Under the pieces are notes generated by a model. That model was not told the origin of the DNA and ran no database searches. It was given only the letters and a program-made list of their open reading frames with translations. Positions 17,804 to 63,156 of a stretch of 64,000 nucleotides of DNA are shown here, piece by piece. The first letter of the stretch is position 1, and each line of letters begins with the position of its first letter. The stretch is taken from positions 57,970,300 through 58,034,299 of the forward strand of contig NC_068981.1 of the NCBI RefSeq assembly GCF_001194135.2, given 5' to 3'. The translations under genes and the position numbers were made by a program. This DNA comes from Octopus bimaculoides (taxonomy: Eukaryota).

Positions 17804-17893
17804 GTGGTAGCCTTACTTTCAAGTAATAACCCCAGTGAGGTCTTAAGAGAATTGTTAACTTCCGGCTGGGACATAAATGAGAAGAGTGTAATT
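17804..17893 (+). CDS. Exon, first visible ankyrin-like repeat (VVALLSSNNPSEVLRELLTSGWDINEKSVI)
   Basis: Pyrimidine tract + TAG acceptor, GTAAGT donor, 90 nt, phase 0/0. ELL..GWDIN.K resembles the end of an ankyrin repeat. Its link to the next exon is inferred. Confidence 0.7.
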
Positions 17894-62800: not shown

Positions 62801-63156
62801 AAAGAGAAATATTATCTTACTTGGAATCAGGTGATATTTGGTATCTGACCCATGCAAGCATGGAATAGTGGACGTTAAACAAAGGTGAAACAAACATACC
62901 TATTAAATTATCTATTTTTTCCTTTTCGTTACTATCCATAACTAACTAATACTTCTTCACCTCTCACATATTTTTCTTACTTATCAATAGAATTCATTAA
63001 GGGTGATGGTACTGCCATTTGCTATGAAGAGTTTCTTACTATCCAAAACTCAATACCTTTCTTTTTAAATAGGCATCCTTACTTTTGGTCAAATCAGCGG
63101 AAACTTCAGTTCTTGTTAACTGTTGGAAGTGATATCCTAAATGCTTTGATGTTACA
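17804..63156 (+). CDS. Multi-exon gene (partial at both ends): ankyrin repeats + long insert + IRE1/RNase L-family pseudokinase + start of KEN ribonuclease domain (RNase L-like architecture)
   Basis: 16 exons assembled by hand, each with an AG acceptor and a GT (one GC) donor and matching phases: 17804-17893, 27130-27228, 29870-29977, 30361-30459, 31293-31391, 32225-32329, 33510-33839, 36240-36470, 39588-40547, 43441-45359, 48366-48516, 50043-50231, 53335-53446, 60351-60430, 61867-62060, 63073-63156. Total 4850 nt with no in-frame stop. Motifs: ankyrin GxTxL..A, AVK, HGRLEPKNILI, SNYG, SDIQVAGMVAYFILSGGHHPFG, HPYFWS. Confidence 0.88.
17985..18960 (+). mobile_element. Degraded CRE-like non-LTR retrotransposon 3' part (restriction-like endonuclease region)
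   Basis: Frameshifted motifs ALPVTNIGL, LHISITLRVGADVC, VKRTL...VP*VLE, EKRSDELT, LI*DV..SDSFARSY, KIIKYRSL..RYQFMPVVVETSGVLG, VSVA...GN. Confidence 0.7.
19584..19615. repeat. Head-to-head interstitial telomeric repeat (TAACCC)3-TAGGG-TTAGGG-TTA
   Basis: Read directly. 19590-19615 is a perfect palindrome. Confidence 0.9.
20455..20650 (+). mobile_element. mariner transposase 3' fragment
   Basis: PYVANLTKNAIQELDWKVLPHPPYSPEIAPSDY (YSPD motif region). Confidence 0.85.
22345..23060 (+). mobile_element. Helitron-like non-autonomous element with a tandemly duplicated 5' end
   Basis: A^TCTATTATATAAAAG start at about 22384 and again at about 22503 (about 119-bp duplication). A degenerate internal repeat of about 270 bp follows (tgaatggatc...atgaaaattcat). 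No 3' CTAG hairpin was identified. Confidence 0.5.
23455..24110. repeat. Inverted repeat pair flanking an assembly gap
   Basis: ccccaccccgttttc...cccaaaaagggttttgtagcatattag (ending at 23601) is the reverse complement of ctaatatgctacaaaaccctttttt...aaaacggggtgggg (starting at 24001). Confidence 0.75.
25849..26972 (-). mobile_element. Degraded, internally rearranged mariner
   Basis: TIR TA-TTGGGTCATCCCATAAATAAT at the right end. QDNVQPH and HPPYSLDIAPSDYHLF motifs. A segment is duplicated at about 26100 and about 26610. Confidence 0.85.
27130..27228 (+). CDS. Ankyrin repeat exon (DGATALAEAIAHKRFDVVKCLITNGADISIRDD)
   Basis: CAG acceptor, GTAAGA donor, 99 nt = 33 aa, canonical ankyrin consensus. 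Confidence 0.93.
27470..27720 (-). mobile_element. mariner 5' transposase fragment
   Basis: MEEQCVCVKFCYKLGKTFKET, a typical mariner N-terminal HTH start. Confidence 0.75.
27991..29535 (-). mobile_element. pogo/Tigger-like non-autonomous DNA transposon, copy 2, intact TIRs, TA TSD
   Basis: TA-CCGTATATGCTGGCGTA at the left end and TATGCCAGTATATACGG-TA at the right end. Inverted homolog of 15335-16955. Confidence 0.85.
29870..29977 (+). CDS. Ankyrin repeat exon (YGKTALMKAIMVKDSNIFHIIWQLRNDSISLLETDL)
   Basis: ttttcctttcacAG acceptor, GTGAGA donor, 108 nt, phase 0/0, GKTAL..A motif. Confidence 0.9.
30361..30459 (+). CDS. Ankyrin repeat exon (QGKTLLHLAVEVQWEKCVLLLINNGASVNSCDN)
   Basis: ctttcAG acceptor, GTAAGT donor, 99 nt, canonical ankyrin repeat. 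Confidence 0.95.
31293..31391 (+). CDS. Ankyrin repeat exon (EGKIPLMLAASQGHNRIVEQLILAGSNILAADK)
   Basis: AG acceptor, GTATGA donor, 99 nt, canonical ankyrin repeat. Confidence 0.95.
31761..31975 (+). mobile_element. SINE copy
   Basis: aaggcggtaagctgacagaa head, the shared core, and the gccttgtgcctag tail. Confidence 0.85.
32225..32329 (+). CDS. Degenerate terminal ankyrin/cap exon (YEETSICHAYQSLMWCTAQQMLNRLTANECRQYVK)
   Basis: ttttactttcAG acceptor, AAG|GTAACT donor, 105 nt, phase 0/0. Confidence 0.8.
32852..32914. repeat. (CT)n/CCCT microsatellite
   Basis: Read directly. Confidence 0.95.
33510..33839 (+). CDS. Exon, predicted helical domain (SLLEKIRSPKE...HAGGPEFFLK)
   Basis: Poly-T + CAG acceptor, AAG|GTAATA donor, 330 nt open frame, phase 0/0. 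Confidence 0.8.
34545..35100 (-). mobile_element. RTE-clade LINE 3' fragment with (GAT)n tail
   Basis: REKLGIRRIRHSVQERRLHWFGHVMQM...GTRGRGKPRKT, plus the 3' UTR shared with other copies. Confidence 0.85.
36240..36470 (+). CDS. Exon, predicted helical domain (AATFHQKDG...SQSIHKK), ending at a GC donor
   Basis: ttttatcAG acceptor, 231 nt open frame. The AAG|GCAAGT donor gives the phase 0 that the next exon requires. Confidence 0.75.
39101..39324 (+). mobile_element. SINE copy
   Basis: Same head, core and tail as 31761-31975. Confidence 0.85.
39588..40547 (+). CDS. Large exon: basic coiled coil (QLLGDEIRLNKKKEKKLVKKQLKRK) then low-complexity S/N/K/T-rich region
   Basis: ttttttcttAG acceptor in frame with ORF 39660-40673, GTG|GTATGT donor, 960 nt. 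Confidence 0.88.
41374..41692 (+). mobile_element. tRNA-derived SINE (second family)
   Basis: A box TGGCTCAGTGG, B box GAGTTCAATTCC, and the gtgttcttgagcaagacacttt core. Confidence 0.8.
43441..45359 (+). CDS. Giant exon: disordered region with PDV-type tandem repeats, then the pre-kinase segment
   Basis: tcttttatAG acceptor in frame with the 616-aa ORF 43513-45363. The AG|GTAACC donor gives phase 2, matching the next exon. 1919 nt. Confidence 0.92.
43975..44405 (+). repeat. Coding tandem repeats within the giant exon (PDV-containing 6-, 11- and 12-aa units)
   Basis: Recurring ccagatgtaaat, acaacacttgtagatgttacaccagttgct about 3.5 times (33 nt), and DLDVT..LD units. Confidence 0.9.
46840..48116 (-). 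mobile_element. Full-length mariner (1277 bp), inactivated
   Basis: TIRs TTGGGTTGTCCGGAAAGTTTGTGCTG / CAGCACAAACTTTCCGGACAACCCAA with TA flanks. Motifs WVPHEL, TGDEKW, HDNARPH, YSPDIAPS. One in-frame TGA at 47749-47751 and a frameshift after YSPDIAPS. Confidence 0.95.
48366..48516 (+). CDS. Pseudokinase N-lobe exon (GNHFVVVGLLSDGTELAVKLY...SRFVVNYK)
   Basis: tacttcAG acceptor, phase 2 start, AVK motif, GTAAGA donor. An alternative in-frame GTAAGC donor lies at 48481. Confidence 0.9.
49183..49380 (+). mobile_element. SINE copy
   Basis: Shared SINE core and tail. Confidence 0.75.
50043..50231 (+). CDS. Pseudokinase exon (SVMVGQKFFLATMNLCECNLKEYI...LKYLHDNNIVHGRLE)
   Basis: atttcAG acceptor, GAG|GTAATC donor, 189 nt. 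LCE..L hinge and L.YLH...IVH catalytic-loop context. Confidence 0.93.
51813..53077 (-). mobile_element. Full-length degraded mariner
   Basis: TIRs TTAGGCTGTTCTGAAAATAATGGCC / GGCCATTATTTTTGGAACAACCTAA with TA flanks. Motifs WVPHEL, HDNAKPH, HPPYSSDHSPIDY. Several frameshifts. Confidence 0.92.
53335..53446 (+). CDS. Pseudokinase exon (PKNILITVYGKLLLSNYGFHSSWIHGPDCQNCNYFMS), not in the ORF track
   Basis: atttcAG acceptor, G|GTATGT donor, 112 nt. PxNILI motif, with NYG at the DFG position. Confidence 0.92.
53650..56740 (+). mobile_element. Degraded RTE-clade LINE (endonuclease end, RT, 3' UTR), interrupted by a SINE
   Basis: FCDANDLMICNTDFQKP, GDA*DRN, GVHQGTVLSPLLF, NSIWCTQGKLWTHKRCS, and the RTE 3' UTR. 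Confidence 0.9.
56236..56471 (+). mobile_element. SINE with 15-bp TSD inserted in the RTE 3' region
   Basis: AGAAAGCTACTTTCT at 56221-56235 and at 56472-56486. Confidence 0.9.
57104..57403 (-). mobile_element. 5'-truncated R4/Dong-like non-LTR retrotransposon in a (TAA)n microsatellite
   Basis: The minus strand reads KYKDLEIEITRMWNLKTETIPIIVGALGIIKK...IQKIALLGTAHILRKTLSIQ*. (TTA)n lies on both sides. Confidence 0.8.
57404..57516. repeat. Compound microsatellite (TTA)n(TAG)n(CAG)n
   Basis: Read directly. Confidence 0.95.
57995..59003 (+). mobile_element. RTE 3' fragment with tandemly duplicated 3' UTR and (GAT)n tail
   Basis: LREKLDLRSIRCGVQER remnant, a duplication of about 180 bp (58315-58490 / 58490-58665), ending in aaacgatgatgatgat. 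Confidence 0.85.
59410..60260 (+). mobile_element. Degraded Penelope-like element (RT C-terminus / GIY-YIG linker)
   Basis: FNKAANYYN...KSG, NIIWFNPSF, LIREHFPANHKYHMLFNKNNIKVSYSC. Confidence 0.8.
60351..60430 (+). CDS. Pseudokinase exon (DSQKCWQPSEFLRSCDGQKFSIKSDIQ), not in the ORF track
   Basis: tattcaAG acceptor, CAG|GTGAGT donor. Phase 1 in, phase 0 out. WQPSE sits at the W-x-APE position, followed by SDI. Confidence 0.9.
61867..62060 (+). CDS. Pseudokinase C-lobe exon (VAGMVAYFILSGGHHPFG...PDERPTASEVLK)
   Basis: ttttctAG acceptor, GTGCGT donor, phase 2. G.HPFG and RPTA.EVL match the IRE1-family C-lobe. Confidence 0.93.
62555..62880 (+). mobile_element. tRNA-derived SINE
   Basis: ggtgtggctgta...aagaagtt head and the gcaccttgggc.agtgtcttctact.tagc core, shared with fragments near 37.1 kb and 43.0 kb. 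Confidence 0.65.
63073..63156 (+). CDS. Kinase end / KEN (RNase) domain start (HPYFWSNQRKLQFLLTVGSDILNALML)
   Basis: ttttaaatAG acceptor, GTAAGT donor. Compare IRE1 HPFFWS..KQLQF and RNase L HPFFW.....TLRNVGNE (both recalled from memory). Confidence 0.88.

What the first reader, a model, noticed from the sequence alone, without database searches (positions are those of the whole stretch)
17804..63156. RNase L-like ankyrin-pseudokinase-KEN protein in an invertebrate (probably octopus) genome
Seen: 16 phase-consistent exons encode N-terminal ankyrin repeats, then a degenerate IRE1/RNase L-type kinase, then the KEN-domain start HPYFWS. No signal peptide or IRE1 luminal domain is visible. Established: ANK + pseudokinase + KEN is the architecture of RNase L, the 2-5A-activated antiviral ribonuclease usually described from jawed vertebrates. 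IRE1 is instead an ER membrane protein with an active kinase. OAS-family enzymes are known from some invertebrates. Inference: this is a cytosolic ligand-sensing ribonuclease, either an ancient RNase L relative or an independent ANK + IRE1-module fusion, which could point to an uncharacterised cephalopod antiviral or RNA-decay pathway.
Basis: partly seen in the sequence, partly recalled or inferred. Interest (0 to 1): 0.92.

Follow-up and report, generated by a model that had tools for sequence, protein, structure and literature searches.

The report
Octopus ankyrin–pseudokinase–dead-KEN gene
A real, expressed octopus gene joins ankyrin repeats to an IRE1/RNase L-type kinase–nuclease module, but both enzyme sites are degenerate, so it is more likely a scaffold or sensor from a conserved, unstudied invertebrate family than an RNase L-like antiviral nuclease.

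Summary
Assembled RNA contigs from three runs splice exactly 16 exons between 17804 and 63156 into one mRNA. They add a first coding exon (1983-2334, ATG at 2089) and at least one exon beyond the window. All three assembly gaps lie in intron 2, and a spliced contig bridges them. The protein (about 1,808 aa) has ankyrin repeats, an armadillo-like helical domain, a basic cluster, about 880 disordered residues, an IRE1-type pseudokinase (HRD is HGR, DFG is NYG) and a KEN domain. There is no signal peptide, luminal domain or convincing membrane helix. The rest of the KEN domain, read from the orthologous Octopus vulgaris locus, is full length. However, it carries I/Y/N/L where IRE1 and RNase L have the catalytic Y/R/N/H, and a cuttlefish orthologue also lacks the histidine. 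Orthologues with the same architecture occur in molluscs and an annelid, with more distant relatives in arthropods; all are annotated "uncharacterized". The folded domains are under purifying selection (dN/dS 0-0.11). The kinase-KEN module is closer to IRE1 (182 bits) than to RNase L (121 bits). The architecture is therefore RNase L-like, but it is not an RNase L orthologue and is probably not a nuclease in octopus. Most likely it is a non-catalytic scaffold or sensor.

The parts
1983..2334 (+). Exon 1: 5' UTR plus the start codon (ATG at 2089). Encodes aa 1-82, a basic N-terminus with no signal peptide.
   Evidence: The X1 649-nt contig maps to 1983-2336 and then to 17804. There is an in-frame stop upstream of the ATG. 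The O. vulgaris model P0002 has the same N-terminus.
17804..17893 (+). Exon 2 (aa 83-112), the first ankyrin-like repeat.
   Evidence: Spliced 2334|17804 and 17893|27130 in an X1 contig.
17894..27129 (+). Intron 2. It contains all three flagged assembly gaps and an X5-only alternative, non-coding 5' exon at 25479-25576.
   Evidence: Colinear with the gap-free O. vulgaris locus.
27130..27228 (+). Exon 3 (aa 113-145), ankyrin repeat.
   Evidence: Joint 27228|29870, GT..AG. Pfam Ank_3 at aa 113-141.
29870..29977 (+). Exon 4 (aa 146-181), ankyrin repeat.
   Evidence: Joints.
30361..30459 (+). Exon 5 (aa 182-214), ankyrin repeat.
   Evidence: Joints. Pfam Ank at aa 183-214.
31293..31391 (+). Exon 6 (aa 215-247), ankyrin repeat.
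   Evidence: Joints.
32225..32329 (+). Exon 7 (aa 248-282), a capping repeat and the start of the helical domain.
   Evidence: AlphaFold2 model.
33510..33839 (+). Exon 8 (aa 283-392), armadillo-like helical domain. It holds the family motif GPEFFLK at 33819-33839.
   Evidence: Joint 33837|36238. Family alignment. Model pLDDT 85; Foldseek hits to DARPin-armadillo fusions, HACE1 and FEM1B.
36240..36470 (+). Exon 9 (aa 393-469), helical domain. It is followed by a GC-AG intron.
39588..40547 (+). Exon 10 (aa 470-789). It holds the last conserved helix (IWTHFIEYF), a basic NLS-like cluster KKKEKKLVKKQLKRK (39684-39728), and then disordered sequence.
   Evidence: No Pfam hit.
43441..45359 (+). Exon 11 (aa 790-1429). 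Disordered linker with 6-aa acidic P-D-V-type tandem repeats (DNA 43961-44402), then the conserved lead-in to the kinase (SVRWQKHL at 45244-45267).
   Evidence: dN/dS is 0.27 in the linker.
48366..48516 (+). Exon 12 (aa 1430-1479), kinase N-lobe. The beta3 lysine is kept (ELAVKLY at 48409-48429). There is no glycine-rich loop.
50043..50231 (+). Exon 13 (aa 1480-1542), kinase hinge to catalytic loop. HGR replaces HRD; the motif HGRLEPKN spans 50217-53343.
53335..53446 (+). Exon 14 (aa 1543-1579). NYG replaces DFG (53377-53391).
60351..60430 (+). Exon 15 (aa 1580-1606), activation-segment and P+1 region.
61867..62060 (+). Exon 16 (aa 1607-1670), kinase C-lobe.
63073..63156 (+). Exon 17 (aa 1671-1698). 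End of the kinase and first helix of the KEN domain: HPYFWSNQRKLQFLLTVGSDILNALMLQ.
   Evidence: The alignment to IRE1 runs through this segment.
63157..64000 (+). Intron 17, which runs to about 147 nt past the window end. It is partly retained in RNA. Retention places a TAA stop at the donor site (63156-63158) and would give a protein without the KEN domain. The KEN exons 18-20 lie beyond the window.
   Evidence: A genome-colinear contig covers 63127-64179 at depth 50/138/17. The spliced junction contig has depth 301/133/35 in X1/X2/X5. The position of exon 18 comes from the O. vulgaris locus.

Best explanation
Shown. The window holds most of a single expressed gene. It spans more than 62 kb here, with 17 exons in the window and 3 more just beyond. 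It encodes a soluble protein of about 1,808 aa. The order of parts is: basic N-terminus, five to six ankyrin repeats continuing into an armadillo-like alpha-solenoid, a basic NLS-like cluster, a disordered acidic/Ser-rich linker of about 880 aa with species-variable 6-aa repeats, and a C-terminal IRE1-type kinase-fold plus KEN (HEPN) module. It is the octopus orthologue of a conserved, unnamed family found in molluscs and an annelid, with more distant arthropod relatives. The family has the same domain order. The kinase has lost the catalytic Asp (HRD to HGR), the DFG Asp (NYG) and the glycine-rich loop. The KEN domain (read from the O. vulgaris orthologue) has I/Y/N/L at the four catalytic positions Y/R/N/H.

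Inferred. In coleoid cephalopods the protein neither phosphorylates nor cleaves RNA by the IRE1/RNase L mechanism. It acts as a non-catalytic scaffold or sensor. The ankyrin-solenoid platform would bind a partner or ligand. The pseudokinase-KEN module would supply regulated dimerisation or oligomerisation, and possibly RNA binding without cleavage, as proposed for HEPN domains that lack the Rx4-6H motif. The basic cluster suggests nuclear access. Retention of intron 17 yields a KEN-less isoform and may tune the output.
For: One transcript.

Open frame: 1,698 codons in the window and 1,693 in O. vulgaris, with no stops. All 17 exons are 96-100% identical between the species, against 88-93% for introns. 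dN/dS is 0.11 for the ankyrin repeats, 0 for the helical domain, 0.065 for the kinase and 0.27 for the linker.

Domains: Pfam Ank and Pkinase in the window protein. Ank + Pkinase + Ribonuc_2-5A above the curated cut-off in scallop, limpet, snail, one unnamed Logan transcript assembly (P0016) and the annelid orthologue, and in a more distant scorpion relative.

Full-length colinear alignment, including GPEF, IWxxF and ELLEEEEREK..KKREKK motifs.

KEN exons 18-20 in the O. vulgaris locus have canonical splice sites and phases. The first 10 codons of exon 18 are confirmed in the window species' RNA.

Catalytic columns come from the HMMER alignment to human IRE1 and an 86-sequence alignment. Cuttlefish P0188 has HGR / NYG / Y-Y-N-R.

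Structure: the cuttlefish kinase-KEN model (pLDDT 79.5) matches IRE1 kinase-RNase structures best (TM 0.66-0.72, E 1e-19). The N-terminal model (pLDDT 85) is ankyrin plus alpha-solenoid.

Localisation: no N-terminal signal peptide. The only hydrophobic peak (aa 349-367, KD 1.8) is a buried helix of the solenoid.

The idea that HEPN domains without the motif bind RNA non-catalytically is from PMC3710099.
Against: The KEN core of the window's own species was not read. Only its first 10 codons were seen. The rest rests on an orthologue with about 6% synonymous divergence.

Non-cephalopod molluscs conserve V-Y-N-C-C-L-H-F almost invariantly. This suggests a functional site in which Tyr replaces Arg, so the family as a whole may be catalytic in an unorthodox way, and octopus might be too.

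The octopus kinase keeps the beta3 lysine, so nucleotide binding is not excluded.

Purifying selection fits any function. No partner, ligand, localisation or tissue is known. The scaffold/sensor mechanism is inference only.
Confidence: 0.6

Rival explanations
1. It is an active, ligand-gated cytosolic endoribonuclease working like RNase L: the ankyrin repeats sense a nucleotide second messenger, and the pseudokinase-KEN module dimerises and cleaves RNA.
For: The domain order is that of RNase L, and a complete KEN fold is present. Asn906 is kept. Other molluscs keep Tyr, Asn and His. OAS genes exist in molluscs while RNase L is reported absent (PMC6307210), so an effector is 'missing'. The folded domains are under strong purifying selection.
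Against: Octopus lacks three of the four catalytic residues (I/Y/N/L). Cuttlefish lacks the His and the Arg. There is no histidine anywhere in the motif region. About 1,150 residues separate the ankyrin repeats from the kinase, whereas 2-5A in RNase L is clamped between the ankyrin repeats and the adjacent kinase N-lobe (established knowledge, PDB 4OAU/4OAV). RNase L is the weakest scorer against the family profile (121 bits).
Confidence: 0.12
2. It is a divergent IRE1, the ER unfolded-protein sensor. The O. vulgaris record's automatic name 'IRE2' implies this.
For: The best PDB sequence and fold matches are IRE1.
Against: There is no signal peptide, luminal domain or membrane helix; the N-terminus is ankyrin repeats. 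The kinase is inactive by sequence, and the KEN catalytic residues are lost. Canonical IRE1 sequences form a separate clade with support 0.93 and score only about 180 bits against the family profile, against 437-658 bits for family members.
Confidence: 0.01
3. It is an artefact: two neighbouring genes (ankyrin, kinase) joined by misassembly or read-through, or a decaying pseudogene.
For: The assembly has gaps. The 1.2-kb and 1.9-kb low-complexity ORFs between the domains look odd. The O. vulgaris gene model skips several exons.
Against: Single RNA contigs cross every junction in three runs. The same architecture occurs in more than 10 species, including full-length scallop transcripts. The gaps are intronic. 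The frame is open across about 1,700 codons in two species, with dN/dS of 0.17 overall.
Confidence: 0.02

Closest known systems
IRE1 (ERN1/ERN2; yeast Ire1)
   Same: The kinase fold fused directly to a KEN/HEPN domain. IRE1 is the best sequence match (88 bits for the single sequence, 182 bits for the family profile) and the best fold match (TM about 0.7). The HP[FY]FWS junction and the K-LQF--V-SD-I helix are shared.
   Different: The octopus protein has no signal peptide, luminal sensor or transmembrane helix; it has ankyrin repeats and an alpha-solenoid at the N-terminus instead. Its kinase motifs are degenerate (HGR, NYG). Its KEN tetrad is I/Y/N/L instead of Y/R/N/H. About 880 disordered residues are inserted.
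RNase L (2-5A-dependent ribonuclease)
   Same: The domain order is N-terminal ankyrin repeats, then a catalytically inactive kinase-like domain, then KEN. It is soluble. It is the only well-studied protein with this architecture.
   Different: RNase L has nine ankyrin repeats packed against the pseudokinase. It keeps the beta3 Lys and D-F-D and binds nucleotide. It has the R-N-x3-H active site. It is 741 aa long. The octopus protein is about 1,800 aa, has a long linker, lacks the active site, and scores lower against RNase L (121 bits) than against IRE1. Orthology is not shown.
Unnamed lophotrochozoan/arthropod ANK-solenoid-IDR-pseudokinase-KEN proteins, e.g. Argopecten XP_069113852.1, Mytilus XP_063441107.1, Ostrea XP_048759681.2, Biomphalaria XP_055891980.1, Owenia CAH1796528.1; O. 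vulgaris CAI9715102.1
   Same: The architecture is colinear over the full length, with shared motifs (GPEF, IWxxF, the basic cluster, HG[N/R], xYG, and the C-terminal FP.LF...Y.PFF). Kinase-KEN identity is 30-36%. Scores against the family profile are 437-658 bits.
   Different: Non-cephalopod members keep Y/Y/N/H in the KEN domain; octopus has I/Y/N/L. All are annotated only as 'uncharacterized' or 'hypothetical'. I found no publication on them.
Integrin-linked kinase (ILK), a functional analogy only
   Same: N-terminal ankyrin repeats plus a pseudokinase that works as a protein scaffold (established knowledge).
   Different: It belongs to an unrelated kinase subfamily, has no KEN domain and no long disordered linker. 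The comparison is to a mode of action, not to a family.

Membership tests
RNase L | N-terminal ankyrin repeats, then a kinase-like domain, then KEN, in one soluble polypeptide. | tested here: met
   RNA contigs join the ankyrin and kinase exons. Pfam Ank + Pkinase. The KEN exons are in the orthologous locus.
RNase L | Ankyrin domain directly adjoining the pseudokinase, so that 2-5A is bound between the ankyrin repeats and the kinase N-lobe. | tested here: not met
   About 1,150 residues (helical domain plus disordered linker) lie between the last ankyrin repeat (aa ~247) and the kinase (aa ~1415). The 2-5A-contact residues themselves could not be tested.
RNase L | KEN active site with Tyr plus R-N-x3-H. 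| tested here: not met
   Octopus has I/Y/N/L and cuttlefish has Y/Y/N/R at these columns, against YRNH in pig RNase L and in IRE1. The octopus residues were read from O. vulgaris, not from the window species.
RNase L | Closest sequence relationship is to RNase L. | tested here: not met
   Family profile: IRE1 182 bits, RNase L 121 bits. With the single sequence, RNase L is not among the top 60 PDB hits. The NJ tree puts both outside canonical IRE1 with only 0.63 support.
IRE1 | Signal peptide, ER-luminal sensor domain and a transmembrane helix N-terminal to the kinase. | tested here: not met
   The N-terminus is basic and is followed by ankyrin repeats. There is no Pfam luminal domain. The only hydrophobic peak is a solenoid helix.
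IRE1 | Active kinase motifs (VAIK Lys, HRD, DFG). | tested here: not met
   Lys is present, but HRD is HGR and DFG is NYG.
IRE1 | Kinase-KEN module homologous in sequence and fold. | tested here: met
   PDB hits at E 5e-24 (single sequence) and 8e-53 (profile). Foldseek TM 0.66-0.72 for the cuttlefish orthologue.
HEPN superfamily, catalytic members | Rx4-6H endoRNase motif (PMC3710099). | tested here: not met
   The motif region reads LYNTCILYKQM in octopus, with neither Arg nor His.
Unnamed ANK-solenoid-IDR-pseudokinase-KEN family (molluscs, annelid; arthropod relatives) | Colinear full-length architecture: ankyrin repeats, a helical domain with the GPEF motif, a basic cluster, a long disordered linker, an HG[N/R]/xYG pseudokinase and a C-terminal KEN domain. 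| tested here: met
   Full-length alignment. Pfam on members. The octopus composite scores 529 bits against the family profile, against 318 bits or less for any outsider. It groups with the molluscs in the NJ tree (0.67).

The most novel reading that the evidence does not exclude
The ANK-solenoid-pseudokinase-KEN family is the invertebrate counterpart, or even the ancestor lineage, of RNase L. Under this reading, members that keep Y/Y/N/H (bivalves, gastropods) would be ligand-activated ribonucleases. They would supply the 'missing' effector for invertebrate OAS or cGAS-like enzymes. The cephalopod copy would be a derived, catalytically dead regulator.
Probability: 0.1. Interest if true: 0.85.

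Novelty: new variant of a known kind. Interest (0 to 1): 0.5.

Why it matters
RNase L is usually described as a vertebrate invention, and a published survey reports OAS but no RNase L in oyster, limpet, brachiopod and cnidarians (PMC6307210). This locus shows that proteins with the RNase L domain order are conserved across protostomes, with related ANK-kinase-KEN proteins in cnidarians, teleosts and lungfish, and that none has been studied. The octopus copy has lost both the kinase and the nuclease catalytic residues yet is under purifying selection. It is therefore a natural double pseudoenzyme. It offers a test of what an IRE1-type kinase-KEN module does when it can do neither reaction. Its bivalve and gastropod orthologues are the obvious candidates to test for a nucleotide-gated RNase in invertebrate immunity.

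Tried and rejected
- The word-index protein search with concatenated kinase exons found only an unrelated kinase and missed the 99%-identical O. vulgaris protein. The exhaustive HMMER search was needed.
The KEN exons of the window species could therefore not be read from RNA beyond 30 nt.
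- A raw-read RNA run of 2026 (X37) had no reads on exon 17.
The cuttlefish orthologue was modelled instead.
- The profile of the ankyrin-helical region against PDB sequences returned only generic ankyrin proteins. RNase L was not favoured, and nothing matched the helical half. This says nothing about RNase L ancestry.
- Pfam found nothing in the 887-aa linker.
- The NJ phylogeny is too weak to decide between RNase L sister-group status and independent fusion. Ankyrin-bearing members fall on both sides of the main split.
- Five literature searches found no description of the family.
- Two alternative 5' exons (16079-16863 in X2, 25479-25576 in X5) were examined and carry no in-frame ATG. The main 5' exon used in X2 and X5 was not identified, because exon 1 has very low depth there.

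Full report
**1. The sequence and the gaps.**
The window is AT-rich (35% G+C) animal DNA with four runs of N. The three gaps flagged in the finding (19403-19511, 21614-22342, 23610-23824) lie between two exons. An assembled RNA contig joins those exons directly (17893|27130, GT..AG). The orthologous Octopus vulgaris locus has no gaps and is colinear across this interval. The gaps are therefore intronic and do not affect the reading frame.

**2. The gene model from RNA.**
Three RNA runs of the window's own species (coded X1, X2, X5) hold the large exon 43441-45359 almost completely. Other runs of the same studies hold little or none, so expression is tissue- or stage-restricted.

Laying their contigs on the window gave the following.
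- A 4,553-nt contig (depth about 200) splices 30361-30459 | 31293-31391 | 32225-32329 | 33510-33839 | 36240-36470 | 39588-40547 | 43441-45359 | 48366-48516 | 50043-50231 | 53335-53446 | 60351-60430 | 61867-62060 | 63073-63156.
- A 649-nt contig splices 1983-2334 | 17804-17893 | 27130-27228 | 29870-29977.
- The joint 29977|30361 is seen in X1, X2 and X5.

All introns are GT-AG except 36471-39587, which is GC-AG. Its ATG is at 2089, with an in-frame stop upstream. The O. vulgaris protein starts identically.

**3. The protein.**
The open frame is 1,698 codons in the window. Its parts are as follows.
- aa 83-247: ankyrin repeats (Pfam Ank_2, 84 bits).
- aa 248-500: an all-helical domain with no Pfam or PDB sequence match. 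AlphaFold2 models it with the ankyrin repeats as one continuous solenoid (mean pLDDT 85). It resembles DARPin-armadillo fusions, HACE1 and FEM1B.
- aa 502-516: a basic cluster, KKKEKKLVKKQLKRK.
- aa ~517-1390: no domain hit, and low-complexity composition (inferred to be disordered). It includes 6-aa acidic tandem repeats encoded at 43961-44402.
- aa ~1415-1681: a protein kinase domain (Pkinase, 76 bits). Its best PDB relatives are IRE1 (88 bits), against 47 bits for the next kinase. RNase L is not in the top 60.

The kinase keeps the beta3 lysine but has HGR for HRD and NYG for DFG. There is no N-terminal signal peptide. The single hydrophobic peak is a buried solenoid helix.

**4. The KEN domain.**
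Exon 17 encodes HPYFWSNQRKLQFLLTVGSDILNALMLQ, which aligns with the first KEN helix of IRE1. RNA then splices to an exon that is not in the window. Its first 30 nt encode KNYNTEASI. The junction contig has depth 301/133/35 in X1/X2/X5.

The exhaustive HMMER search found a 99%-identical O. vulgaris gene model, CAI9715102.1, automatically named 'IRE2'. Its genomic locus was retrieved.
- The window aligns colinearly to this locus at 88-93% identity in introns and 96-100% in exons.
- The window's last base corresponds to a point 147 nt before exon 18.
- Three further exons with canonical splice sites and matching phases complete a 137-residue KEN domain ending in a stop codon.

The HMMER alignment of the family profile to human IRE1 and an 86-sequence alignment place the following residues at IRE1's catalytic Y892/R905/N906/H910.
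- Octopus: I/Y/N/L.
- Other molluscs: Y/Y/N/H.
- IRE1 and pig RNase L: Y/R/N/H (the human RNase L crystal construct carries an engineered H672N).

A cuttlefish orthologue found in a second search has HGR, NYG and Y/Y/N/R. Its AlphaFold2 model (pLDDT 79.5) matches IRE1 kinase-RNase crystal structures best (TM 0.66-0.72). The roles of these four residues are established knowledge from mutagenesis of yeast Ire1 and RNase L, summarised in PMC3710099. The fold is therefore KEN, but the canonical active site is absent in coleoid cephalopods. The caveat is that the octopus KEN core was read from the sister species.

**5. The family.**
Proteins of 1,600-2,200 aa with 30-36% identity in the kinase and about 138 residues after HP[FY]FW occur in these species:
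- Solemya, Patella, Argopecten (also as full-length transcript assemblies), Mytilus, Ostrea, Biomphalaria, Haliotis and Pomacea;
- the annelid Owenia.

More distant relatives occur in insects, spiders and a scorpion. Pfam finds Ank + Pkinase + Ribonuc_2-5A above the curated cut-off in five of the six mollusc-type, annelid and scorpion proteins scanned and in none of the four insect or spider proteins; scans of other lineages are described below. Full-length alignment shows the same order of ankyrin repeats, helical domain (GPEF, IWxxF motifs), basic cluster, long variable linker, HG[N/R]/xYG pseudokinase and KEN. All are annotated 'uncharacterized' or 'hypothetical'. Five literature searches found nothing on them.

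**6. Is the gene functional?**
Between the window species and O. vulgaris, dS is 0.064. dN/dS is 0.11 for the ankyrin repeats, 0 for the helical domain (12 synonymous, 0 non-synonymous changes), 0.065 for the kinase and 0.27 for the linker. The gene is under purifying selection and is not decaying.

**7. Relation to IRE1 and RNase L.**
The family profile scores 182 bits on human IRE1 and 121 bits on RNase L, against 86 bits or less for other kinases. In the local set, family members score 437-658 bits, canonical IRE1 about 180 bits, and RNase L lowest.

A Kimura-corrected neighbour-joining tree gives these results.
- Octopus groups with the molluscs (support 0.67).
- Canonical IRE1 forms its own clade (0.93).
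- One split (0.63) puts the protostome family, RNase L and the fish ANK-kinase-KEN proteins together.

Ankyrin-bearing cnidarian proteins fall on the other side of that split. The choice between 'ancient RNase L relative' and 'independent fusion' is not resolved.

**8. Isoforms.**
A genome-colinear contig covers intron 17 from the donor site to about 30 nt into exon 18, at depth 50/138/17. Neighbouring introns have depth 0. Retention puts TAA in frame at the donor site and would give a KEN-less protein. Alternative 5' exons exist (16079-16863 in X2, 25479-25576 in X5), but they carry no in-frame ATG.

**9. Interpretation.**
However, the defining catalytic features of both RNase L and IRE1 fail the tests, and the ankyrin repeats are far from the kinase in sequence.

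The best-supported reading (confidence 0.6) is a non-catalytic scaffold or sensor. It is a double pseudoenzyme in which the ankyrin-solenoid binds a partner and the pseudokinase-KEN module mediates assembly and perhaps RNA binding. The steps from 'degenerate motifs' to 'scaffold' are inference.

The main rival is a ligand-gated RNase with an unorthodox site (0.12). It is more plausible for bivalve and gastropod orthologues than for octopus. Divergent IRE1 (0.01) and artefact or pseudogene (0.02) are effectively excluded.

**10. Novelty.**
The gene is already present as an automatic model in O. vulgaris, and its relatives are in public databases. The 'kind' (kinase-KEN with ankyrin repeats) is known from RNase L and was noted in a domain survey (PMC3710099). 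What is new is the recognition of a conserved protostome family with this architecture, with a long linker and degenerate active sites, and of the fully dead cephalopod variant. I rate it a new variant of a known kind, with interest 0.5.

Noticed in passing
window 63157-64000 (continues about 147 nt past the window end): Intron 17 alone is substantially retained in RNA: depth 50/138/17, against 301/133/35 for the spliced junction. Neighbouring introns have depth 0. Retention places a TAA stop at the donor site, giving a KEN-less isoform.
   Followed up: partly
window 16079-16863 and 25479-25576: Alternative 5' exons are spliced to exon 2 (X2, depth 12) and to exon 3 (X5, depth 8). Neither has an in-frame ATG. 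Exon 1 is well covered only in X1, so the main 5' end used in X2 and X5 is unknown.
   Followed up: partly
window 43961-44402 (exon 11): Coding tandem repeats of period 18 nt (6 aa, P-D-V/T-type acidic units). Exon 11 differs from O. vulgaris by 18 nt of gaps in the alignment, which suggests variation in repeat copy number.
   Followed up: partly
window 36471-39587: A GC-AG intron (donor GCAAGT), confirmed by RNA contigs in three runs.
   Followed up: yes
window 47044-47670 (-), 52055-52351 (-); also 20461-20652 (+), 25880-26065 (-): Mariner-type transposase remnants in introns. The first two match Pfam Transposase_1 at 98 and 54 bits. The other two have the same PHPPYSP.IAPSDYHLF motif.
   Followed up: partly
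window 54102-55526 (+): A string of ORFs in intron 14 includes a weak reverse-transcriptase match (RVT_1, E 1e-3, at 54852-55082). It is probably a decayed retroelement.
   Followed up: partly
window 2954-4803: A 1,852-nt RNA contig (X1 only, depth 13) lies colinear with intron 1. Minus-strand ORFs there have no Pfam hit. It may be a transposon-derived or antisense transcript.
   Followed up: no
window 7201-8280: Very high contig depth in run X5 only (up to about 14,000, against 24 or less in X1 and X2), inside intron 1. It is an unidentified repeat or tissue-specific transcript.
   Followed up: no
L001 (O. vulgaris OX597814.1:51760069-51857115), gene 10001-87047: The public O. vulgaris model CAI9715102.1 (1,513 aa, named 'IRE2') omits exons 4, 7, 9, 18 and 19 and parts of exons 8, 12 and 14, and misreads the last exon. 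It therefore lacks the KEN core that the genome encodes.
   Followed up: yes
Proteins P0014, P0030, P0037 (lungfish, squirrelfish, salmonids) and P0189-P0212 (many teleosts): Fish have unstudied 'IRE1-like' or 'uncharacterized' proteins. The three scanned (P0014, P0030, P0037) have ankyrin repeats, an intact kinase (HRD/DFG) and a KEN domain with Y/R/N/H, and fall weakly with mammalian RNase L in the NJ tree. They may be the fish counterpart of RNase L.
   Followed up: partly
Proteins P0036 (Lingula), P0012 and P0023 (Xenia), P0011 and P0109 (sea anemones): Kinase-KEN modules are fused to other N-terminal domains in other invertebrates (ubiquitin-like, TPR, long ankyrin arrays, duplicated kinase-KEN). 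Cytosolic IRE1-type modules are far more diverse in animals than the three human genes suggest.
   Followed up: partly
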